A stretch of 64,000 nucleotides of DNA from Asterias rubens (GCF_902459465.1 NC_047068.1:14756001-14820000), one strand, 5' to 3'; counted from the first letter of the stretch, positions 1 to 57,223 are shown. A program made the numbers and translations. The notes: generated by a model not told the origin, from the letters alone.

Positions 1-3000
1 AACACTCAAAATTTGATTGATGCAAATGTAAGCCTATAGCCTTGATGCATTTTATGGCAAAGTTTGATGAATACGCTAACCTATAATAGCCTTGTTGCAT
101 TTTGAGGCAAAATTTGATGAATACGCTAACCTATAATAGCCTTGTTGCATTTTGAGGCAAAACTTGATGAATACGCAAGCCTATAGTCTTGATGCATTTT
201 ATGGCAAAGTTTGATGAATACGCTAACCTATAATAGCCTTGTTGCATTTTGAGGCAAAATTTGATGAATACGCAAGCCTATAGCCTTGGTGCATTTTGAG
301 GTAAAATTTGATGAAAACGCCGCAAGCCTATAGCCTTGTTATATTTTGAGGCAAAATTTGATGAATACGCAAGCCTATAGCCTTGTTGCATTTTGAGGCA
401 ACATTTGATGAATACGCAAGCCTATAGCCTTGTTACATTTTGAGGCAACATTTTGATGAATACGCAAGCCTATAGCCTTGTTGCATTTTGAGGCAAAATT
501 TGATGAATACGCAAGCCTATAGCCTTGATGCATTTTATGGCAAAGTTTGATGAATACGCTAACCTATAATAGCCTTGTTGCATTTTGAGGCAAAATTTGA
601 TGAGTACGCAAGCCTATAGCCTTGGTGCATTTTGAGGTAAAATTTGATGAAAACGCCGCAAGCCTATAGCCTTGTTATATTTTGAGTCAAAATTTGATGA
701 ATACGCTAACCTATATTAGCCTTGTTGCATTTTGAGGCAAAATTTGATGAATACGCAAGCCTATAGCCTTGATGCATTTTATGGCAAAGTTTGATGAATA
801 CGCTAACCTATAATAGCCTTGTTACATTTTGAGGCGAAATTTGATGAATACGCAAGCCTATAAGCCTTGGTGCATTTTGAGGTAAAATTTGATGAAAACG
901 CCGCAAGCCTATAGCCTTGTTGCATTTTGAGGCAAAATTTGATGAATACGCTAACCTATAATAGCCTTGTTGCATTTTGAGGCAAAATTTGATGAATACC
1001 CAAGCCTATAGCCTTGGTGCATTTTGAGGTAAAATTTGATGAATACGCAAGCCTATAGCCTTGTTGCATTTTGAGGCAAAGTTTGATGAATACGCAAGCC
1101 TATAGCCTTGATGCATTTTATGGCAAAGTTTGATGAATACGCTAACCTATAATAGCCTTGTTGCATTTTGAGGCAAAGTTTGATGAATACGCAAGCCTAT
1201 AGCCTTGTTGCATTTTGAGGCAACATTTGATGAATACGCAAGCCTATAGCCTTGTTATATTTTGAGGCAAAATTTGATTAATACGCAAGCCTATAGCCTT
1301 GTTGCATTTTGAGGCAAAATTTGATGAATACGCAAGCCTATAGCCTTGTTACATTTTGAGGCAAAATTTGATGAATACGCAAGCCTATAGCCTCGTTGCA
1401 TTTTGAGGCCAAATTTGATGAATACGCAAGCCTATAGCCTTGATGCATTTTACGGCAAAGTTTGATGAATACGCTAACCTATAATAGCCTTGTTACATTT
1501 TGAGGCAAAATTTGATGAATACGCAAGCCTATAGCCTTGTTACATTTTGAGGCAACATTTGATGAATACGCAAGCCTTTAGCCTTGTTACATTTTGAGGC
1601 GAAATTTGATGAATACGCAAGCCTATAGCCTTGTTGCATTTTATGGCAAAGTTTGATGAAAACGCAAGCCTATAGCCTTGTTGCATTTTGAGGCAAAATT
1701 TGATGAATACGCAAGCCTATAGCCTTGATGCATTTTATGGCAAAGTTTGATGAATACGCTAACCTATAATAGCCTTGTTGCATTTTGAGGCAAAATTTGA
1801 TGAATACGCAAGCCTATAGCCTTGATGCATTTTATGGCAAAGTTTGATGAATACGCTAACCTATAATAGCCTTGTTGCATTTTGAGGCAAAATTTGATGA
1901 ATACGCAAGCCTATAGCCTTGGTGCATTTTAAGGCAAAATTTGATGAATACGCAAGCCTATAGCCTTGTTATATTTTGAGGCAAAGTTTGATGAATACGC
2001 AAGCCTATAGCCTTGATGCATTTTAAGGCAAAATTTGATGAATACGCAAGCCTATAGCCTTGTTACATTTTAAGGCAATATTTGATGAATACGCAAGCCT
2101 ATAGCCTTGTTACATTTTGAGGCAACATTTGATGAATACGCAAGCCTATAGCCTTGTTGCATTTTGAGGCAAAATTTGATGAATACGCAAGCCTATAGCC
2201 TTGATGCATTTTATGGCAAAGTTTGATGAATACGCTAACCTATAATAGCCTTGTTGCATTTTGAGGCAAAATTTGATGAATACGCAAGCCTATAGCCTTG
2301 GTGCATTTTGAGGTAAAATTTGATGAAAACGCTGCAAGCCTATAGCCTTGTTATATTTTGAGGCAAAATTTGATGAATACGCAAGCCTATAGGCTTGTTG
2401 CATTTTGAGGCAAAATTTGATGAATACTCAAGCCTATAGCCTTGTTGCATTTTGAGGCAAAATTTGATGAAAACGCCGCAAGCCTATAGCCTTGTTATAT
2501 TTTGAGGCAAAATTTGATGAATACGCAAGCCTATAGCCTTGTTGCATTTTGAGGCAAAATTTGATGAATACGCAAGCCTATAGCCTTGTTACATTTTGAG
2601 GCAAAATTTGATGAATACGCAAGCCTATAGCCTCGTTGCATTTTGAGGCCAAATTTGATGAATACGCAAGCCTATAGCCTTGATGCATTTTACGGCAAAG
2701 TTTGATGAATACGCTAACCTATAATAGCCTTGTTACATTTTGAGGCAAAATTTGATGAATACGCAAGCCTATAGCCTTGTTACATTTTGAGGCAACATTT
2801 GATGAATACGCAAGCCTTTAGCCTTGTTACATTTTGAGGCGAAATTTGATGAATACGCAAGCCTATAGCCTTGTTGCATTTTATGGCAAAGTTTGATGAA
2901 AACGCAAGCCTATAGCCTTGTTGCATTTTGAGGCAAAATTTGATGAATACGCAAGCCTATAGCCTTGATGCATTTTATGGCAAAGTTTGATGAATACGCT

Positions 3001-4560
3001 AACCTATAATAGCCTTGTTGCATTTTGAGGCAAAATTTGATGAATACGCAAGCCTATAGCCTTGATGCATTTTATGGCAAAGTTTGATGAATACGCTAAC
3101 CTATAATAGCCTTGTTGCATTTTGAGGCAAAATTTGATGAATACGCAAGCCTATAGCCTTGGTGCATTTTAAGGCAAAATTTGTTGAATACGCAAGCCTA
3201 TAGCCTTGTTATATTTTGAGGCAAAGTTTGATGAATACGCAAGCCTATAGCCTTGATGCATTTTAAGGCAAAATTTGATGAATACGCAAGCCTATAGCCT
3301 TGTTACATTTTAAGGCAATATTTGATGAATACGCAAGCCTATAGCCTTGTTACATTTTGAGGCAACATTTGATGAATACGCAAGCCTATAGCCTTGTTGC
3401 ATTTTGAGGCAAAATTTGATGAATACGCAAGCCTATAGCCTTGATGCATTTTATGGCAAAGTTTTATGAATACGCTAACCTATAATAGCCTTGTTGCATT
3501 TTGAGGCAAAATTTGATGAATACGCAAGCCTATAGCCTTGGGGCATTTTAAGGCAAAATTTGATGAATACGCAAGCCTATAGCCTTGTTATATTTTGAGG
3601 CAAAGTTTGATGAATACGCAAGCCTATAGCCTTGATGCATTTTAAGGCAAAATTTGATGAATACGCAAGCCTATAGCCTTGTTACATTTTAAGGCAAAAT
3701 TTGATGAATACGCAAGCCTATAGCCTTGGTGCATTTTAAGGCAAAATTTGATGAATACGCAAGCCTATAGCCTTATTACATTTTAAGGCAAAATTTGATG
3801 AATACGCAAGCCTATAGCCTTGATGCATTTTATGGCAAAGTTTGATGAATATGCTAACCTTTAATAGCCTTGTTGCATTTTGAGGCAACATTTTATGAAT
3901 ACGCAAGCCTATAATAGCCTTGTTGCATTTTGAGGCAAAGTTTGATGAATACGCAAGCCGCCTTGTTGCATTTTGAGGCAAAATTTGATGAATACGTAAG
4001 CCTATAGCCTTGATGCATTTTATGGCAAAGTTTGATGAATATGCTAACCTATAATAGCCTTGTTGCATTTTGAGGCAACATTTTATGAATACGCAAGCCT
4101 ATAATAGCCTTGTTGCATTTTGAGGCAAAGTTTGATGAATACGCAAGCCTATAGCCTTGGTGCATTTTGAGGCAAAATTTGATGAATACGCAAGCCTATA
4201 ATAGCCTTGTTGCATTTTGAGGCAAAATTTGATGACAATGCAAGCCTATAGCCTTGTTGCATTTTATGGTAAAGGTTTATGAATACTTAAGCCTTGTTGC
4301 ATTTTGAGGCAACATTTGATGAATACGCAAGCCTATAGTCTTGTTATTTTGAGGCAAAATATAGCCTTGTTACATTTTGAGGCAAAATTTGATGAATACC
4401 AAGCCTATAATAGCCTTGTTGCATTTTGAGGCAAAATTTGATGAATACGCAAGCCTTTAGCCTTGTTGCATTTTATGCCAAAGTTTGATGAATACTTAAG
4501 CCTTGTTGCATTTTGAGGCAACATTTGATGAATTTGTTACATTTTGAGGCAAAATTTTGT
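1..4560. repeat. Homogeneous tandem satellite, 47-bp unit (GCAAGCCTATAGCCTTGTTGCATTTTGAGGCAAAATTTGATGAATAC) with 50-bp variants; runs off the window start
   Basis: Period read directly (ATGAATACGC at 361 and 408). Recurrent variants GCTAACCTATAATAG and GAAAACGCCGCAAG add 3 bp. Decays from ~4200. Confidence 0.98.
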
Positions 4561-21900: not shown

Positions 21901-24900
21901 GGAGCACCAAGGCCAAGACCAGGGGCAGCAGAGGCCATTGTAGCCATTTCTGTGTAAATCCAAGCCTGTTAAGCAGAGCTCTATGAACTGGGCCCATTCT
22001 CTGTGATGTTCAGACTCACTGGTTTGACTGTTCTCAACAGACGGATGCCAAACTTCTCCATATTCCGGTGGGCTTCAGCAAACACTGTAAACGCCTCGCT
22101 AGCCTTTGGCTGAGGTTCTCTAGCTCCGATAACAGAAAAGACTTCTCCAAAGGCTAGAAGTGAAACACAGAAACACTCATGAGGAATAACTAAAGATTCA
22201 AAATATAGCACATCACTGTACGTGGTTTTTGAAAGAGTAATTTCGTTTTAAAGTTGTAGTTTTCGAGAGACCAATTACAAAAAGGAAAAACTGTTGTTGA
22301 CAGGATTTATTTTTGTTTCTGTACAAGTCATAATACAAGTCTAACTGATTTTAATTTTGGATTGAACAAAGACAAGTTTACTAGAGGGGGACTTTCGGAT
22401 TAACGTGCAAGAACTCTTTGAAATGAGTTATCGAACTCTTGTGTCTCCCCATTTTGTCAATATCTTTGTTCCGGGGTGCCAGTCAGAATTAAGCCATACA
22501 ACCTGTAAATGCACATGGCCACGGATCATATCAAAGTTTAAGAACCTGGGAAGCGACAGCAGAGGGATCAATTTAAAAGGGAATGCCACTTTTTATTTCA
22601 AATATCAAGGGAAATTATGTGCATTTTGAACAAGTATTTCTCAATTTGAAAAGAAACCAAACTTACATTTGTGTGTCTGAGAGAGGTCATAGAACGCCTT
22701 AAGCATCTTCTTAGCATGTTCCATAAGACCCTTGTACATCACTGATGTTCCTTGGAGTTCATCCATCTTTTTTATCAACACGTCTGCAACAAGTTAGAGA
22801 AACATAACAATTTAATGACTAAGTAAGGAAGGGGTCTATATCAGAAGTGCAGAATCCATTGTATGGTCAGTAACAACTCAACTTTAAACCCCCTAAATCT
22901 GGGTGTTTCTACTTTCGCAGCTTTCGAAACAAAGGTGGTATTAACATGGGGGTTTAACAGCATTAAAGCATAGAAATGCTTTTTTCAAAACTCTTTAAAA
23001 TATTTGCTCTCCTTGCACTTACCATAACACTTAGGTCTATTATAGCATTTTCAAATACCTTTTAGCTATTTGGTTAATTTAGGTTTTACCCATATACACC
23101 GATGTCTGTCAGTACTTTCCCAAGTCCTTTTCTTTGTATAAACTTCTTTGTTTCGGTTTCTTTTCCTCTCCAGCGCCTCAGATTAGTTTTCTAGATAGAT
23201 GGCGCTATATAACTGCTTATTATTATTTATATTATTATTAATCTGTGAACAAATCACCTGTACGCATATTCCTTGGTGGGATTCAAAACCACAACCTTTG
23301 CAATTCTAGAGCAGTGTCTTACTAACTAGACCACTGAACTTGTCTGGGTTGCTAGAGGCAGTTTGAATCATTTTAGCATCGGGTACCGCAACGCTTTAAT
23401 AGATTGATATTTGCATTGGGGATAAGAAATGTTGTTGGTGTTACCCATATACACCGTCGTGTGCTAGCACTGTATACTCAGTACCTTCCTGAGCTCAGTG
23501 AAAAAAATCTATAAAAGCTATTTTGTTCTTCCTTACCATTGCACAAGATGGCTCTGCTAAGACCCAGGGCGTCGGCGGTAGATGAGCTCATATTCTCCAC
23601 CATACGATGCTTGGCCTTCTTCAAGACGATGTCCAAACTTTTGCCCTGTTTAGGATCTGCATGCAGCTTGTTATAGTTGATTATCACTTCAGACTTTGGA
23701 GAAGAAAATGAAGAAAAAAAACCGGAAAAACTAAGAAAATCATGATCAAATGATTCTAAAATTACTCCATAATGGGGAGATTGCGTAATTCCAAAGAGCT
23801 GCGTATTATGCAGAACATATTTTGTGGCAGTTTTCTGCAAAGGCCAAACAAAATTTATGTTTGTGCTTATGGTAACGGTCTGAGAAAAAAATCAAGGTAT
23901 GTCGAAGGGAAACAATTTTATTTTGCTCATTACTAAGGACCCAAATAGAAATAAGTCTGAGTTATTGGCTTTTTGAGTTATCCTTGGATAAGTTTGTGCA
24001 GTATTTCTATCTTGTGTTCTATTTTGGTTTATCTTATTTCATTGTCTTTTTTCCTGTTGTATTTTTGGCATGTTCTTGCTGTATTTTTATCCTAATAAAA
24101 TCAATCAATCAATCAACCAATCATTTTTTAAGTCAGTATAAGTCGTTGAGCAAGGTGATGCAAAGCTCCTCCTAGAACCACGAGTAGACTTGGTCAGACA
24201 ATAGGCCTAACAGGTAATGGAAGAATTAGAACAACAGTTTGCCACCATTTTATCTGAAAATGGAATTATAAAACTATTCAAACCGGGCTTGATACTTGGC
24301 CCTTGGAGAAAAGTAGGAAATCTAAAAAAATGACAACCCACTTTTGTTGTAGCCTGAGCGACACCGACTTGTGAAAACCTCTTTGGAATTATTCGCTCTT
24401 AAAATAATTATTAAGATCAATAAGATGTTTGTCATACACATTTTAAATATTTGTTTTTGCTTAAAAATTAACTGATGCTTTTAAATAAAAACCAATTTAC
24501 ATGTAGCGGCAAATAGACAAACGGAAATCTACCAGGGCGATAAGAAGAGGTGTTACATAATGCACTTTTTCGTGCCGTTATATGACAGCTTGAACAAATT
24601 AGTGATCAGCACACAGTGGAAGGACGCTTGTCCTTCCTCATCAAGTATATCAAGTTTGATCATTTCAGATTGTAATATTGTACCTGGTTTCAGCTACGAC
24701 TGAGGTGCCAATTTACAACCACATCATCACTGCCTGAACAAAGACGCGTCTTCTCTGAGGTTGTGGTGCTCAGTCTGATGACAAACAAACAGGACGCCGC
24801 GGTGCATGTGGATGCATTCACTGGACTTAGACATTTCAGTTAGACAGTCTTACACCACAAGAAGCTTTGATTGAGCTATCCTCACGACATGCAGTCTCAC

Positions 24901-27900
24901 TTGTGAGGGATAATTTTACCATTTGGGTTTGACAAGAACTATGGTTGTAGTGAAATGGAAACATTAGAAGAGAGACTTTCCACTTGCAGTGGAGCAAAAT
25001 AGGCTCGACATACATTCAGTTGAGGTTAATGCATTGAACAGAGCTAAAAACCCTACATAGTACCACAAAGAGCTTGATTGATTGTTATTCGGTTGTAGTT
25101 ATTTTTTAACTCCACCATGAATTCGACCGAATGCAGTATACAGGATACACTGAACATCACTGAAGAGGAAGTGTCTCAATGGCTTTATAGTTCTATGGAA
25201 ACAGCCATAATAACCGTTATTCTGCCAATTGATTTGGGTCTGTGTACACTCTTTAACTTAATCTTTCTCTTTGTAGTTTTCCGTGTTCCTGAGACGCGAT
25301 CAGACACGACTATATACTTGATACACGTGGCATGGGCTGACTTTTTATTCAACGTCAGTTCTGTGTGTTTCTACTTATCCACATTTATACAATCTCCTGT
25401 GAAAGGTGATCAATCAATCAGCCATCCAGTGCAGTGTTGGCTATTAGCTTTGTCTATATTGACTGGATATGTTACATCTATTGCATTGGTAACTATGATG
25501 TCATTTGAGAGATATCTCGCCCTCTGTCATCCTTTGAAACATCTTAAAATTCGTGGTCGTCGACGAACCCTGAAAATAGCTGGGTTCTGCTGGCTGACTG
25601 GGTTAGCCTGCGCCGTGTTGGAAATACCCGCAACTGCGGTTCGTCAAAGACGATGTGTACGTTGGCCCGATGAAGTTACCTACCAGATGCTACCATCATC
25701 TTTAAGTTATTGTTCACCTATAAGCCCACAGGTGTATCAATACACCCAACTCCTCATACTTCTTCCGTGGTTCCTATCAATGTTTAGCAGTGTTTACATG
25801 TACGCACGCATCATACAGGTACTCAGCAAACGCAGGGAATTCAATGGTAGACGGGAGACAGACAGGAAAGCCGTGCAAATCCGCAACCAGGTCGCCAAAA
25901 TGTTGATTGCCAACGGTGTGGTTTTCTTCATTTGTCACGCTCCGTACATTGTGTTGGTGTTCACGATCTGGTTCTGTCGTACGGCTCAAATTGACAATCC
26001 ATTAGAAGGTTTTGTACTCACTGGAGGCACTTGGTTCATGCTCCTGCCTCAGTATGTTAACACCATTGTCAATCCTGTGATCTACGGACTGACAAACAGG
26101 GAATACCGAACTGCCTTCTTTCAAGCCTTCCACCTTAAGAAAGCCTCTTGTACGATCAGTCCATGCCAGAAGTAATCCACCAACTGGTGCTATACAGCCA
26201 GATGGTCAGCAACAAGTCTTACCATCAGTCCATGCAGTGATTAATCCACCACCTACTGATGAGCCAAATGCTACAACTGAGGAAGGCGACAATGACAATG
26301 CACCCATGCAAGGAACCAGACTATGATTTGACAGTGAACCATAACGTTCCGAAACTGATTCATTGTAAACAGTAAACACCATCTTCAATGACTAAAGGAC
26401 ATATGAATGTTTATCACTTCATGGGATTTAGTTGTATTTGCAGTGCTTAAAAGTAAGGTATTTTGTTCTTATGCGTAAATCAGACTGGAACTCAATGTTA
26501 TCCGTAACATGTCCCAATGTACTGTTATTTTTAACACAAAAATTACACTTTTATCTTAATTTGACTGCCTGTACATTGTAGGTTGTTTTTGTGTATCTTA
26601 ACAAAAAATAGCTGTGTTAGCCTTATAGATAAAACAAAGAAGGAAATGGTAGCACTTAAAGACTCACTAGCTACATAAAAACTGCATTCATGAGCTTTTG
26701 CAGCAACTACATAATTATCTTTCCAAAGTATTTGTTGCCACGAAAGCATATGCAGATTTGATGTAATTAGTTAGGCTTTAAGTGCTACCACTACCTTCCA
26801 TGTAAGACAAACACATTTAAAATATTTTGCTTAAATAAATAAGCTGTTACTTATGCCCCTAAGGATGATTTGCATTACCTTGATAGCTTGTATCATGCGA
26901 GCTACTTCCACTTTAGTTCTCCCTTTAACTGATTTGCCGTTAACTCCAACTATCTCGTCCCCTGATGCCAAAGTACCATCCTTGGTGGCAGGCGTGTTAT
27001 CAAATACCTGAAGCAACCAAAACAAATAACAGTGCATTATTTTGTCTTTTAGAAGTACCTTCACTCTTAAAGGGTCTGTATACATTTGGTAATGACTCTA
27101 AAAATTGATGGCAATAAAAAACTACTTGAAAAAATCACAACATCTTTCGATAATTTAATGTATTTTGAGAAACTTTTCACTTCCATGTACTGCGGTGTAT
27201 TAATATGGAAAAAGATATCACGTTTGATCTAATAACAATATTGAGTCTGGTGCTCTTAACCACTTGACCAAGACACTTTGCTGCGTGTCGTGGCCGAGCC
27301 TTTGTCGAGCGATCCAAGTCACTGTCCAAATCCAAGCTGTGATGTTGTCAGCAGCAGAGTGCTGGTTCGAATCCTGATCTTGACTCTTGTGCCTTTGAGC
27401 AAGGCACTTAAAGGAACACGTTGCCTTGGATTGGACGAGGTGGTCTATAAAAAGTGTTTGTAACAGTTTGTTATAAAATGTATATGATTGGAAAGAGTTT
27501 TCAAAAGTAGAATACAATGATCCACACAAGTTTGCTTCGAAATTTCATGGTTTTCCTTTTACTGTGCAAACTGACACCATCGGCCATTTATGGGAGTCAA
27601 AAATTTGACTCCCATAAATGGCCGCCCGTGTTATACGACGAGGTAAAAGGAAAACCGTGCAATTTCGAGGCATGTTTGTGTGGGTCATTGTATTCTACTT
27701 TTACAACATCTGTCTAACCATATGCATTTTATAACAAACGGTTTCAAACGCTTTTTATAGACCAACTCATCCGATCCAAGGCAACATGTTCCTTTAACCA
27801 CAATTGTTAAATAAAGAGTTGGGAAGGTAGTGCATTTTGCTCTACCGGGCCATGCTACTTGATACCATTCATCCTAACTGACTGTGAAGGGGTAACCCCG

Positions 27901-52150: not shown

Positions 52151-55100
52151 ATGGAGCAGATGACATCTGCAGTAACTGCCTTGTTGGTGTTGGTTCTTAT
52201 TTGTATTGAGCCAGTTGCTGCTCAAGCCAGTGGTAAGTACTTTAATTAAAAAGGGACAGAAAACAGTGAGGAGTAAAAAATTTATGTAAATATTCATTTA
52301 ATTGACCATTCTTGATCATATACAATACGGAGTAAGAAGCTAAAAAATTTGCGCTGCTAGTCTATGACTGAGGGACTCCATAAACCAGGGTCTTGGGTAC
52401 TTAATGCAATCAAGATGTGTGGCTTCTAAGGTCACAAGGGTCAGAGTTTAGCAATCAGTCTTATAATAATTTATGGTCTTGGTGTTTCTCATTCCTATAG
52501 GTGGTATATCCGGTGTAGCGATTGGTCTTATCGTGGCTGGAGTGGTTGCTGTTGTTGTCATCGTTGTGTGTATTATTATTGGCTGCATGATCTACAAGAG
52601 GAAACAGTAAGTCAAGACGATTCTTTATAGACCTTTATCAAGCTGCCACCATCTTGGGCATGTACCCTGTATCCAATAAGAGTACTGAAGGCTAATTTAC
52701 ATTAAACAAAAAGGGACCAGGCTGTTCTCCTTCCAGCCTCATCAGTTTGATTACATTTATTTTAATGGGGAGAAAATCAAGATGGCTGCATTTTTTAGTT
52801 TTTCACAGCTCGCTATAAAACTTGAAAACACAGTAGGCCTACCCAAAGTCTTGCTGTGCCTGCTGGAACTTTCCTTTTGTCCTTTTCTTTAATTTTGGCT
52901 AACTGCAGTTGTCTTGCCTTTATGTTTATAGCTTACAAACTTCTAACTTTACTGGACATTGTGTATGAATGCTTTGAATACTAATAGAAAAATATCAAAC
53001 TGCTCAATTGGACACAGGACACATTTTCATTGAGCTGTTCAAGCAGCAGAAAGTGCTTAACAAATTTCCGCTTTCTTTAGCAAAAGTAAGCATAAAACCA
53101 ACCACAACTGGTACATTTGACAAAGTAGTATTTTGGCCAGTAACATTATTATGATCAGCAAAATTTGTTTGTGCTCCACGTTACTTTTGTGCTTAAGCAA
53201 CTCTTTATGAAACTGGGTCCTGTAGTGTTTTTTACAGTGTGCCACTTGAACTTTAGAATTGTACGGCAAGTCAAAATAAATTTACACAATTACCTTATCT
53301 GAAATCTAGTTTTACTGCGATTGTTCCTTAAAAAATGTGCACACACAAAACTTGAGTTTAGTACTCTTATCTTAGCCGATACAACACAATACTATACATC
53401 CTTATTATTTGTTCAATTTTGACTAACCCAGGGTTTTACTTCAAAAACCTTCACCAAAAGATTTTGATTGTATTTATATTTTTAGTATTTCAAATATTTC
53501 ATTTTGTTGTGTTAAGTTTTCTTTTGTTTTTTTCTGGACTGTAAACTATAAAAAAAAAATTACTGTGTCAAAATTACACAACTTCATGCTGAAACAACAG
53601 TTGGAAAACTCAAAGTAAAAACAGTCTACCAACTAAAGATTATTTAATTTATACATTAGGGTCAACTTGTTATCTGCCCATTTATTTATTAATTACCAAA
53701 TATAAATTGTGATCATCGTTATGAAAATTGTCTCTCTCATTTTCCTTGATCACAGTCTTGGTCGTCTAGAATTAGAACATCCTGAATTTGAACGTACGGG
53801 GGAGCCCTACTACAAGGCGTCAGTAACTAATGAAACCATAATCCCTAGTGCTACTCAGGCCCGATATGACACAACAGATTCCAATGCCTCATTGGATAGG
53901 ACGGCAACTGCGGATTCAGGTACTTTAAATGAACATCTTGTCCAAAATATGTGAAGAGCTATACCCGTAGTGAGGTGTTGTCCCTTTTTCTCTTGAAATT
54001 TCGACATATTCGTTCGTATCTATATAGTGTCCCTCACAACGCAGTCAGCAATTTGCTATGATTTTCACCACACCAAGGCACAAACATACCCCCAAAATGA
54101 CAAAAAGACCCAACTAAATAGCCTAACACCGCATACTGGCAACTCAATATGTATAAGATGCAACATTAGACATGTGCCCCAGACCAGACCAGTCAACACC
54201 GGGCCAATTTGGAATACAGTACCCCAGCAGTTACCGAGTCTAGTAATGAGCCATTTTTGCAATAAAAATCATACTTTATTTTCTCCTCTGAAGAACGTTT
54301 ATATTTAAGTTGTAAATATTAGTTATTAGGGAAAAGTTTCCGTATGGCGCCACCACTTTTTCATTCGATATTAAATGATATAATATCTAATTTACCTCAA
54401 TGAGATATCCCTTTTTGTTAAAATGAGTGAACAAGTGATGGCGCCATACGGAAAGTTATCTGTTATTTAGGCCTACCTGCATTTTACTGAAGAGTCTCTG
54501 TGGAGCAAAGTGCGGCCTAAGCTTCTTGGCAGGGTTGAATCTTCTCTTGAGGTTTGCCGTGTTGTTTGTGTTTGTAATTACAAGAGTTATAGAAAAGCCA
54601 TGTAGTTTTACAGCTGACTATTGCCAATGCTGTAGTAGGTAGTGTGTACTGTCCACCACAATGCAGAAGAATAAGTCACCAGTGATGTAGAATCGCTCAA
54701 GTGTGGAAGGCTACACAATAGAAGACTGGTCAGTCCACACTGGGATGTATTCAAGGAAATTTTTATTCAATTCAATTTTATATTTTATTTTTATTAGGCA
54801 TGCTCAAAAGTACATGAAGTTCCTTTTCCTTGTGTGAAAAAGATAAAATTTACCACTCTAATTAACAATTAAAAATGTTAATAAAAATAAAAATAAATTA
54901 ATTCTTGTATATTTAATTGACCCAAAAATTTAGATTTCAATTTTAAATAGTTAGTTTTTTAGAAATTAAAATTACAAACTTTTTATTTATGGTACTACAC
55001 ACAATAAACAATGGTTGTAGTGTAAGTAATTAAATCTAAAAATCAGTTACTGGTAGTGTCAGGATGCCAATTTTATTTCACATCCATCTTAATAATTGTA

Positions 55101-57223
55101 TGATGTAATTTGTTCATTGTATCTGTCAAAATTCAGTCAGAGAAAAAAAACTTTCAAAAAACAAAAACAAATAATTGCTGATAATTGATTGGGCCATGCA
55201 ACCTTGAGGGTAAATTCTGGGGGAAAGTGCCATCCTACTAGTGTGCTGAATTTAATCAAGTAGCTGATCACAAAAACATCAGAATAAAGGTTACCAGCCA
55301 AAATACCAGATCACACGTACCGTTTTATAGTTTTGCTGAAAGATTTTAAGCAGAATGTTAAGCAGAATTTTATGCCTGTGCAGATCTATAAAGGTGGGCC
55401 CTCTTGACTTCTCTTCCTCCAAGCACAGAGGGAGCTGAAGCTCAAAAAGTAGCTAAGCACAATTTTGCTTACCAGAATAACAGCAAAGATACTGACTTTG
55501 ATGGAATTCCTGCTTAGTTTTTAGCAGAAAGTTTTTAAGCGGAATGTTAAGCGGAATTTTATGACGTTGGGCCCAGCACTTCACTTTTGTCTTCTCTTTT
55601 TCCAAGCACAGATGGAGACGCAGTATCAGTTGATGATGGTATGTCGTCAAGGACTGAGAGAAGAGAGAAGTTTGAACTGGAGTTGATGGAGTTACAACCT
55701 TATGCCAGCACCTTCAACGAAATGTCCAAAGATGTACAAGAACGAATCAAGAATGCCAAGCATGGCAACCCCAGGGTGAATGGATACAAGTAAGTCTCTA
55801 GTTAGATCAGTGTCGTCTTTTTGTTTAGTTACAATGTATACTTTGCGTGGTTATTTTCCCCAATCAACAGTTTTTAATTTCTTGTATTGTTGACAAGGAT
55901 GCAACTTAAAAAACCTAGGTATTTCATTATTATACTCTAAAATTGTTTTCAGTCAATTATCAGTAGCTTTTAAAGGCACTGCATGTCCAAAGACTAGTAA
56001 AATTTGAAGTCAAATACTCGCTTAAAGTTATAAATTGAAATTCACTCTAATCTAAACTAGTGACAACTGCAGATGATTTTGTCCCTAGTTTCAATCAAAA
56101 AGAGTGAATTTCAATATTGATCAATAAATGGAATAGTCAAGTTAATCTTGCACAAACATTTTCTCTGAGAAACCCATGTTATACAATCCCTTTAAAAAGA
56201 GCTTTCCTCTTTTAATCTTTCCCTAGGGCTGTATCCAGAGATCTGAGTCGGGTACAGCATTTACTGAGTAAGAGGAATTCCTCTGGGTTTAAGATTCCTC
56301 CAGATGGGGCCGAGCTCTTATCATGGGCCTTGGAGACCAGAACAAAATATGTGGAACTACAACGGGTAAGTGTCTCGGTCTTCTCCAGCAGATAGTCAGA
56401 GAACACTGACCAAAACATCGAGCAGATCAAGCCGGCTCTTTTCAGAGCCACCACTACTCACAAAAGAGATTTTGACATGGTGTCATCGCAAATCTTAAAT
56501 ACTTGGTGCGTCAGTACATCTTGAATCCTGTCTCCCTTGGAATTCATCCCTCTAGCTTGTGCCGAGTTTGATGGATTCAAATCAAAACAGAGACTATCAA
56601 ACAAGAAACTCTGTTCTGGAAAGGGGTAGGCTAAGAGGCATCATTATGTATGTCTGAATCTCTTCTTAAATGCACAGCAGAGAAAAGATATGGAGGCAAC
56701 CGTTTTTTGTCTTGCCATTTAGTATCATCCAGTTATCATTATTTAATGATTGATACAATGCCAGCCTGCATCTGGGCCCTAATTATATGGCACCATGCTC
56801 TAGGTGGCTATGTGCCTCATGACTCCCAGCCAAGGCCATAATTATGTGAGAAGAGTTCATTAGTTCTCTCTTGTGCCACTAGGGTTTTTCTCCGGGCTCT
56901 CAAGTTTTTCTCCCTCCGTTAAAAACAAACACTTTTGATCTCAGGCTGTGCTCCTTTGTTATATATGGGTCGCTGTGCCTGGCCAATCAATGTGTACTCT
57001 ACTGTGATGCTTGTTTTTAGTGCTGTTGCTTTTTATTGGATATTTTTGTACTGAAGTTTTTCACTTAGAAAGCTTTTATTTTTTCTCTTTGCAGTACAAG
57101 TCGCTTAAAGACAGCGGTGATTCTTCCGAGCCTCCAGAGATGGCTTCCATCATGTGGATCCAATCTAAAGATGATTCTCTCTTTGAGGATAAGTCATCTT
57201 TCGATGAGAGCGCCGTCATATGA
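52151..57223 (+). CDS. Uncharacterised single-pass type I membrane protein, 265 aa (signal peptide, almost no ectodomain, long cytoplasmic tail)
   Basis: Coding exons 52151-52232, 52501-52606, 53756-53919, 55612-55789, 56227-56365, 57095-57223 (798 nt). All five introns are GT/AG and phases (1,2,1,2,0) chain without a stop. Probable non-coding exon ending at 49540 splices to 52066. Confidence 0.85.
54327..54465. mobile_element. Short TIR element
   Basis: TTCCGTATGGCGCCACCAC ... GTGATGGCGCCATACGGAA. Confidence 0.75.

What the first reader, a model, noticed from the sequence alone, without database searches (positions are those of the whole stretch)
26134..26326. Hidden +1-frame GPCR tail ending in a class I PDZ ligand (-GTRL*)
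As written the receptor stops at ...HLKKASCTISPCQK*. The +1 frame is open from before helix 8 to TGA at 26324-26326 and reads RKPLVRSVHARSNPPTGAIQPDGQQQVLPSVHAVINPPPTDEPNATTEEGDNDNAPMQGTRL*. It contains an internal repeat (SVHARSNPP / SVHAVINPP; DNA at ~26156 and ~26225) that the TAA interrupts. Removing one A from CTTAAGAAAG (26137/26138) gives a 402-aa receptor. T-x-L-COOH is the canonical class I PDZ motif (as in CFTR DTRL), and the host gene encodes a PDZ protein that binds class I and II tails. Options: assembly error, a segregating allele toggling the PDZ ligand, a recent truncation, or recoding. The ORF track misses this tail.
Basis: partly seen in the sequence, partly recalled or inferred. 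Interest (0 to 1): 0.72.

Follow-up and report, generated by a model that had tools for sequence, protein, structure and literature searches.

The report
Frameshift-truncated starfish receptor with relic tail
A starfish (Asterias rubens) receptor gene really has lost its original tail, including the short end motif its relatives keep, through a genuine frame-breaking mutation; this is ordinary gene decay in a large, fast-turning-over family, not a sequencing error or hidden recoding.

Summary
A 352-aa intronless class A GPCR (25117-26175, +) stops at TAA 26173-26175. The +1 frame stays open to TGA 26324-26326 and ends -GTRL.

The +1 tail is the gene's ancestral C-terminus. It aligns with the tails of the nearest paralogues (BLASTP E 2e-9). 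23 of the 25 nearest paralogues in this genome end in [ST]-x-[LV].

The frame break is real. One independent ENA assembly and contigs from three other sequencing studies all carry the same frame with no indel, so it is not an assembly error. No intact allele was seen.

The paralogue DNA alignment places the break at about 26149-26151, not 26137/8. The window has a net +49 nt there, linked to an old 69-nt tandem duplication.

In the sister species A. amurensis, a ~2.0-kb deletion removed almost the whole gene. Only the tail relic remains, further broken by a 7-nt duplication and a MITE-like insertion.

PICK1 is confirmed as the antisense host gene. Patiria and Acanthaster PICK1 carry no nested receptor, so the PDZ link looks coincidental.

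No frameshift signal or RNA structure supports recoding.

Verdict: a lineage-specific truncation. The gene is either a young pseudogene or a tail-less receptor. Low to moderate interest.

The parts
25117..26175 (+). Intronless class A GPCR ORF, 352 aa, as encoded today. It keeps the ERY and NPVIY motifs and helix 8.
   Evidence: ORF list. Pfam 7tm_1 E 7e-33, 114.6 bits against a cut-off of 30.5. Identical 352-aa protein in NCBI.
26146..26151 (+). Zone of the frame break (TCT T GTA). Upstream, frame 0 matches paralogues (KAS). Downstream, the +1 frame matches them (VRSVHA ~ LRPVHA).
   Evidence: DNA alignment with paralogues L002-L006: net +49 nt in the window starting at 26149.
26173..26175 (+). 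Frame-0 stop codon TAA, inside repeat copy 1.
26150..26326 (+). Relic ancestral tail in the +1 frame: 58 codons plus TGA. The last residues are G-T-R-L, with T-R-L at 26315-26323.
   Evidence: Translation. BLASTP E 2e-9 against an A. amurensis paralogue tail. Alignment.
26151..26219 (+). Copy 1 of the 69-nt tandem duplication (VRSVHARSNPPTGAIQPDGQQQ in the +1 frame).
   Evidence: 68% identity between copies. Both copies are present in A. amurensis.
26220..26288 (+). Copy 2 of the 69-nt tandem duplication (LPSVHAVINPPPTDEPNATTEE in the +1 frame).
24140..26162 (.). Segment absent from the orthologous A. amurensis PICK1 intron. This ~2.0-kb deletion removes the 5' flank, nearly all of the CDS and the frame-break site.
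   Evidence: blastn and alignment of the window against L053.
26879..27034 (-). PICK1 exon encoding part of the PDZ domain. It forms the upstream boundary of the host intron.
   Evidence: PDB PICK1 PDZ hits, E 5.7e-20. tblastn of PICK1 proteins.
23538..23696 (-). Next PICK1 exon, forming the downstream boundary of the host intron. Further Arfaptin/BAR exons run down to 19032.
   Evidence: tblastn. Arfaptin matches on the minus strand.

Best explanation
The +1 open frame is the untranslated relic of the receptor's original cytoplasmic tail.

The gene belongs to an asteroid-specific clade of intronless class A GPCRs. Their tails of about 60 residues end in a conserved [ST]-x-[LV] terminus, usually E-[ST]-[RK]-L, which has the form of a class I PDZ ligand.

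In the Asterias lineage the tail first gained an in-frame 69-nt tandem duplication. That event predates the A. rubens / A. amurensis split. Later a frame-breaking change at about 26149-26151 put the rest of the tail out of frame. Relative to the paralogues the window now carries a net +49 nt there, which is 1 mod 3. Translation now ends 10 codons after helix 8, at a TAA inside repeat copy 1.

This frameshifted state is the real sequence. It is the predominant allele in A. rubens, and probably fixed. The encoded 352-aa receptor lacks the S/T-rich tail and the terminal motif.

Shown here: the tail homology, the position and reality of the break, and the loss of the orthologue in A. amurensis.

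Inferred: the locus is dispensable, and it is either a very young pseudogene or a tail-less receptor that still works. I rate these two about equally likely. Nesting inside PICK1 is a positional coincidence.
For: Tail homology:
- Paralogue tails such as ...RPVHAISHTSTTAAQPSTTEEGNNDTQSMKGTWL* align with the +1 frame PSVHAVINPPPTDEPNATTEEGDNDNAPMQGTRL*. BLASTP gives E 2e-9.
- 23 of the 25 nearest paralogues in the same genome end [ST]-x-[LV], against 4 of 26 more distant ones.
- 40 of 50 relatives from Asterias, Patiria and Acanthaster end the same way.

Reality of the break:
- An independent ENA assembly protein, P0053, differs at 4 residues and ends identically at ...ASCTISPCQK.
- Contigs from three other studies span 26134-26326 with 0 gaps and 1-3 substitutions: X2 record 19, X5 record 31 and X10 record 7. 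No indel and no joint is listed there.

Sister species:
- The A. amurensis PICK1 intron (L053) lacks window ~24140-26162.
- It keeps 26163-26326 at 4.3% divergence, equal to the intronic level of 4.45%.
- The relic there carries a 7-nt duplication and a 344-nt insertion with inverted-repeat ends.

Gene tree:
- The window gene is sister (100/100 support) to a clade that holds both A. rubens and A. amurensis genes. Its lineage is therefore older than the species split.
- No A. amurensis orthologue appears among the protein hits.
Against: - All read evidence comes from assembled contigs, which drop minor variants. A low-frequency intact allele cannot be excluded.
- No RNA data were available, so whether the gene is transcribed is unknown, and translation of the tail is not directly excluded.
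- The break site is deleted in A. amurensis, so the frameshift cannot be dated relative to the species split.
- The 352-codon body is still intact. That would be unlikely (P about 0.008) if it had been neutral since the split. The gene was therefore under selection until recently, or still is. This argues against an old pseudogene but not against truncation.
Confidence: 0.82

Rival explanations
1. Assembly or consensus error: the true gene is a 402-aa receptor and the extra base exists only in the reference.
For: The break is equivalent to a single base, and the tail frame is fully open.
Against: The same frame with no indel appears in contigs from three other studies. It also appears in an independent ENA assembly whose protein differs at 4 residues yet ends at the same stop. 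The reference does carry private alleles at 25580 and 26101, but not at the break.
Confidence: 0.02
2. Segregating polymorphism: an intact allele with the -GTRL tail coexists with the truncated allele and toggles the PDZ ligand.
For: The tail is still open. The frameshift may be young, with a 95% bound of about 0.09 substitutions per site. Starfish populations are polymorphic, and several amino-acid variants were seen.
Against: All five non-reference data sets carry the frameshifted form: P0053, P0052 (N-terminal part only), X2, X5 and X10. No contig bubble or indel appears at 26134-26326. With four informative independent samples, the truncated allele frequency is probably above about 0.5.
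Confidence: 0.08
3. Recoding: programmed +1 ribosomal frameshifting, or removal of a tiny GT..AG segment (for example 26150-26201, 52 nt), restores the tail in some of the products.
For: CUU-AAG-A at 26134 shares the P-site codon of the yeast Ty1 CUU-AGG-C site (my own knowledge). A GT..AG pair 52 nt apart would give KKAS|YGQQQVLPSVHA...GTRL in frame.
Against: The ancestral frame continues through KAS, so the real break (UCU-UGU-A) is not a known shift site. AAG is not a slow codon. The local RNA fold is no better than shuffles (z 0.08). Twelve GT..AG pairs restore the frame, as expected by chance. No contig joint supports any of them, and 52 nt is very short for an animal intron. The orthologue is deleted rather than conserved in A. 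amurensis.
Confidence: 0.04
4. The open +1 frame is a chance feature of the 3' UTR and was never coding.
For: Open frames of 63 or more codons occur at 3-4% of positions in this window.
Against: There is specific homology to paralogue tails over about 40 residues, including the stop position, and the clade-wide terminal motif is present.
Confidence: 0.01

Closest known systems
Echinoderm lineage-specific 'odorant-receptor-like' class A GPCR expansions (sea urchin surreal-GPCRs; Acanthaster planci OR-like groups A-K; PMC5442662, PMC7042368)
   Same: Intronless rhodopsin-type receptors in large tandem arrays. There are at least 115 matches in this genome, clustered on contigs C5, C8, C15 and C16. 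Divergence is fast (dN/dS about 0.42), with gene gain and loss between close species.
   Different: Membership of a named A. planci group was not tested, and sensory expression is unknown. The cited papers mention no PDZ motif and describe the C-terminus as divergent. This clade instead keeps a conserved terminal [ST]-x-L.
Class I PDZ-binding C-termini of membrane proteins (CFTR -DTRL, beta-2 adrenergic receptor -DSLL, NaPi-IIa -ATRL; NHERF-type ligands; from my own knowledge)
   Same: The relic tail ends -GTRL, and most clade members end -E[ST][RK]L. This is the X-[ST]-X-hydrophobic-COOH form.
   Different: No binding has been tested for any member. In this gene the motif is out of frame and not at the end of the encoded protein, which ends -CQK.
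Chemoreceptor pseudogenes and segregating truncations in large receptor families (for example vertebrate olfactory receptor pseudogenes)
   Same: A single disabling frameshift in an otherwise intact single-exon receptor, with the orthologue lost in the sister species.
   Different: The break leaves all seven helices and helix 8 intact, so the product could still signal. The body ORF shows no further lesions.
Eukaryotic programmed +1 frameshift sites (antizyme UCC-UGA-U, Ty1 CUU-AGG-C)
   Same: A 0 to +1 frame relation with a long open +1 frame.
   Different: There is no shift-prone site at the ancestral break, no stimulatory structure and no conservation.

Membership tests
Rhodopsin-like (class A) GPCR, Pfam PF00001 | Score above the Pfam gathering threshold across seven helices. 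| tested here: met
   114.6 bits against a cut-off of 30.5, residues 47-323, profile positions 2-260 of 260.
Rhodopsin-like (class A) GPCR, Pfam PF00001 | E/DRY motif after TM3 and NPxxY in TM7. | tested here: met
   ERY (SFERYLALC) and NPVIY are present in the translation.
Class I PDZ ligand | S/T at position -2 and a hydrophobic residue at the free C-terminus of the translated protein. | tested here: not met
   The encoded 352-aa protein ends -PCQK. The motif -GTRL exists only in the +1 frame.
Class I PDZ ligand | Motif conserved at the C-terminus across relatives. | tested here: met
   23 of 25 nearest paralogues and 40 of 50 relatives from other starfish end [ST]-x-[LVIM].
Class I PDZ ligand | Physical binding to a PDZ domain (PICK1, NHERF or another). 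| not tested
   No binding prediction or assay was run. I make no binding claim.
Programmed +1 ribosomal frameshift | Known shift-prone site at the frame junction. | tested here: not met
   The junction is UCU-UGU-A at 26146-26152. CUU-AAG-A at 26134 lies upstream of the ancestral junction and lacks a slow A-site codon.
Programmed +1 ribosomal frameshift | Stimulatory RNA structure, or conservation of the site in orthologues. | tested here: not met
   Fold z-score 0.08. The orthologous site is deleted in A. amurensis.
Unitary pseudogene | Disabling lesion relative to the ancestral reading frame, present in independent individuals. | tested here: met
Unitary pseudogene | Loss of selective constraint on the remaining ORF. 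| tested here: inconclusive
   The body is intact, with P about 0.008 if it had been neutral since the species split. All three DNA-level coding variants are nonsynonymous (S26F, A155V, E329Q), but the numbers are too small to decide.
Nested gene in a PICK1 intron | The receptor lies between two PICK1 exons on the opposite strand. | tested here: met
   PICK1 exons at 27034-26879 and 23696-23538 on the minus strand.
Nested gene in a PICK1 intron | The nesting is conserved in other starfish. | tested here: not met
   No receptor in the Patiria (L054) or Acanthaster (L055) PICK1 loci. Only a tail relic remains in A. amurensis (L053).

The most novel reading that the evidence does not exclude
The 352-aa product is a working, naturally tail-less receptor, kept by selection in A. 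rubens after it lost the clade's conserved PDZ-type terminus. The intact body ORF would be improbable under neutrality if the frameshift predates the species split. This would be a natural knockout of the tail motif. It could show what the conserved -E[ST][RK]L end does in this starfish receptor clade. A minor variant of this reading is that a small share of product regains the tail through frameshifting or a micro-intron.
Probability: 0.3. Interest if true: 0.45.

Novelty: new member of a known kind. Interest (0 to 1): 0.27.

Why it matters
For annotation: the 352-aa model is the true coding sequence and should not be 'corrected'. The 3' UTR holds a recognisable relic of the former tail.

For biology: the case documents step-by-step decay of one member of a fast-evolving starfish receptor family. 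The gene is truncated in one species and deleted in its sister.

As a by-product, a whole asteroid GPCR clade was found to conserve a class I PDZ-type C-terminus, usually -E[ST][RK]L. The echinoderm receptor papers I read do not mention this feature. It could guide work on how these putative chemoreceptors are trafficked or scaffolded.

The proposed link to the host gene's PDZ domain does not hold up.

Tried and rejected
- The look-up of sequencing runs failed three times as busy before it answered.
- No run on record is RNA, so expression and transcript ends could not be assessed.
- Run X17 was chosen hoping it was a sister species. It held only a few identical fragments of the same species.
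- DNA for the ENA contig of P0053 could not be fetched because the sample file is too large. Its synonymous differences are therefore unknown.
- The first PICK1 search, with a crustacean representative (P0203), returned no starfish among the 120 listed. A hemichordate query (P0296) then reached the Asterias PICK1 cluster.
- dN/dS of the tail against paralogues was too noisy to date the loss of constraint: 0.6-0.95 over 36 codons and about 0.45 over the last 20.
- Polarising the 7 tail differences between species by eye gave 2-3 changes on the A. rubens branch and 4-5 on the A. amurensis branch. This is not significantly asymmetric.
- The micro-intron idea was rejected for lack of any joint and because many GT..AG pairs restore the frame by chance.
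- I ran no PICK1-tail complex prediction, because I do not claim binding.
- The one earlier scan note near this place (s1-178803, at 52151-57223) concerns another gene and had no bearing. A word search of earlier findings returned nothing.

Full report
**What is in the sequence**

The window lies in Asterias rubens. Its PICK1 protein is XP_033631010.1, and it sits on the same 21,886,259-bp contig as the receptor protein.

On the + strand, 25117-26175 is a single-exon ORF of 352 codons. It is a rhodopsin-type GPCR: Pfam 7tm_1, E 7e-33, 114.6 bits against a cut-off of 30.5. It ends ...FHLKKASCTISPCQK, followed by TAA at 26173-26175.

The +1 frame is open for 77 codons from 26091. It ends ...NDNAPMQGTRL, followed by TGA at 26324-26326.

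A direct repeat with a 69-nt period is present. The word tcagtccatgc occurs at 26156 and 26225, and the 69-nt units are 68% identical. The TAA lies inside copy 1.

An open frame of 63 or more codons occurs at 3-4% of positions in this window, so openness alone would be weak evidence.

**The +1 frame is the ancestral tail**

A six-frame search of the same genome found at least 115 related single-exon receptors, many in tandem arrays. The closest are 61-64% identical: L002-L006 on contigs C16 and C15. They are 385-395 aa long, and the match to the query stops at residue 343 of 352.

Their tails read ...FH[ML]KAS TNRQQNILRPVHAISHTSTTAAQPSTTEEGNNDTQSMKGTWL*. The window's +1 frame reads ...PSVHAVINPPPTDEPNATTEEGDNDNAPMQGTRL*, and it aligns with these tails through to the stop codon. 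BLASTP of the 63-residue +1 peptide against the tail of an A. amurensis paralogue gives E 2e-9.

The terminal motif is a clade feature:
- 23 of the 25 nearest paralogues in this genome end [ST]-x-[LV], as GTWL, ESRL, ETRL, GTRL, ESRV or NTKL.
- Only 4 of 26 more distant relatives do.
- 40 of 50 related proteins from Asterias, Patiria and Acanthaster also end this way, mostly E[ST][RK]L.

This is the form of a class I PDZ ligand. That statement rests on my own knowledge of CFTR -DTRL and similar tails. No binding was tested.

**Where and what the break is**

In the DNA alignment the window matches the paralogues in frame 0 through GAAAGCCTCT (K-A-S). It then carries a net 49 extra bases (26149-26197), after which it matches again in the +1 frame. 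There is also a separate in-frame 3-nt difference at about 26137.

The frame junction is therefore at about 26149-26151 (TCT T GTA), not in the A run at 26137/8. Either position gives 402 codons if one base is removed.

The 49 nt can be read in two ways. One is an in-frame 69-nt tandem duplication plus a 20-nt loss at its 5' edge. The other is a duplication plus a 1-nt gain. The available relatives are too distant to choose between them.

Both repeat copies are open and read SVHA..NPP in the same (+1) frame despite 32% divergence. Both are also present in A. amurensis. The duplication is therefore old, and it probably existed as coding sequence before the frame was broken.

**The break is real, not an error**

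The 90%-identity cluster of the protein holds an independent ENA assembly product, P0053 (sample ERZ23498370). It differs at four residues and ends at the same ...ASCTISPCQK.

Contigs from three further studies span the region with no gap:

| Run | Record | Span | Differences |
|---|---|---|---|
| X2 | 19 | 25491-26655 | 3 |
| X5 | 31 | 25998-26562 | 1 |
| X10 (a marine metagenome) | 7 | 26008-26800 | 1 |

No insertion, deletion or joint is listed anywhere in 26049-26545. All three runs carry C at 26101 and T at 25580. The reference's E329 and A155 are therefore private derived alleles, since the paralogues have Q and V. This also shows that these samples are independent of the reference.

Contigs can hide minor alleles, so a rare intact allele is not excluded. 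The truncated form is clearly the predominant one.

**The sister species**

No A. amurensis orthologue appears among the protein hits. Orthologous pairs in this family are 88-92% identical, so one would have been found.

In the tree the window gene is sister, with 100/100 support, to a clade holding both A. rubens and A. amurensis genes. Its lineage therefore predates the species split.

I reached the A. amurensis PICK1 gene (XP_071797510.1; locus L053) through the PICK1 protein cluster. The intron aligns with the window on both sides, but window ~24140-26162 is missing. The junction reads ...aagtcagtaat|atgccagaag....

This ~2.0-kb deletion removes the 5' flank, all but the last 13 nt of the frame-0 CDS, and the break site itself. 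The tail relic 26163-26326 remains. It has:
- 7 substitutions in 164 nt (4.3%);
- a 7-nt duplication (GGAAGGC);
- a 344-nt insertion with 16-bp inverted ends and an 8-bp target duplication.

Intronic divergence at the locus is 4.45% (120 of 2697), with 19 frame-breaking indels. The relic therefore evolves like neutral DNA.

**Timing and function**

I used the local neutral rates, namely the 4.45% intronic divergence between the species and the observed frequency of frame-breaking indels. With these, a 58-codon frame stays open with probability about 0.47 over the time since the species split. That probability falls to 0.05 at about 0.09 substitutions per site. The frameshift is therefore young compared with the split from the paralogues (dS about 0.55). 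It may be older or younger than the species split.

The 352-codon body would stay intact with probability of only about 0.008 if it had been neutral since that split. The receptor was therefore under selection until recently, or still is.

The three coding variants seen at DNA level are all nonsynonymous: S26F, A155V and E329Q. Further protein-level variants, A135D in the ERYLA motif, R149Q and S237R, hit conserved positions. This hints at relaxed constraint but is far from significant.

I cannot decide between a young pseudogene and a functional tail-less receptor.

**Host gene**

PICK1 exons lie on the minus strand at 28153-28040, 27034-26879, 23696-23538 and onward to 19032. The receptor is nested antisense in the 26879/23696 intron.

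The PICK1 loci of Patiria miniata and Acanthaster planci hold no receptor. Paralogues with the same terminal motif lie in unrelated arrays. The coincidence of a PDZ-ligand-like relic inside a PDZ-protein gene therefore has no support as a functional link.

**Recoding**

The junction UCU-UGU-A is not a known shift site. CUU-AAG-A at 26134 resembles Ty1 only in its first codon and lies upstream of the ancestral junction. The local RNA folds no better than shuffled sequence (z 0.08).

Twelve GT..AG pairs would restore the frame, including a 52-nt one at 26150-26201. That number is what chance gives, and no contig joint supports any of them. No RNA run was available.

**Literature**

Papers on echinoderm receptor expansions (PMC5442662, PMC7042368) describe large lineage-specific OR-like families. 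They do not mention a PDZ-type terminus.

**Verdict**

This is a genuine, lineage-specific frameshift truncation in a birth-and-death receptor family. The sister species has a deleted orthologue.

The event is ordinary in kind, so interest is low to moderate. The conserved clade terminus is a useful side result.

Noticed in passing
L053:10416-10766 (A. amurensis; corresponds to the point between window 26299 and 26300): A ~344-nt insertion with perfect 16-bp terminal inverted repeats (TAAGCTTGGGCGATAT) and an 8-bp target-site duplication (ATGACAAT). It looks like a MITE-type, hAT-style element that landed in the receptor tail relic.
   Followed up: partly
Own-genome paralogues L002-L026; proteins P0002-P0051: A whole asteroid clade of intronless class A GPCRs conserves a C-terminal [ST]-x-[LV], mostly -E[ST][RK]L: 23 of 25 nearest paralogues and 40 of 50 relatives in other starfish. 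The echinoderm OR-like receptor papers I read do not mention it.
   Followed up: partly
G000:C16:6345642-6346674 (L007): One member of the C16 tandem array matches the query as two overlapping pieces (residues 1-115 and 108-343) in different frames. It is probably a frameshifted pseudogene among near-identical neighbours (L002, L003, L005).
   Followed up: no
G000:C15:2468735-2469751 (L008; protein P0007, 361 aa): Another clade member has a short tail of 32 residues after NPxxY, ends -QQQI and lacks the terminal motif. No hidden frame with the motif was found. Tail loss therefore recurs in the family.
   Followed up: partly
window 25580 and 26101: The reference carries C (A155) and G (E329). 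All three other sequencing runs and the paralogues have T (V) and C (Q). These are private derived nonsynonymous alleles of the reference haplotype.
   Followed up: yes
window 26546-26800 and 27407-27800: Contig depth jumps from about 20 to 1500-4000 at 26546-26800 in the animal runs. Window 27407-27800 matches several places in L053 in both orientations. These are interspersed repeat families flanking the receptor's 3' end and the PICK1 exon.
   Followed up: no
L053:1-19308 called genes: The A. amurensis annotation lists a 136-residue histone-fold product whose gene range spans the whole PICK1 locus. It also lists a squalene-epoxidase-like gene (FAD_binding_3/SE) just upstream on the opposite strand. 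The very long histone gene model looks like an annotation oddity.
   Followed up: no
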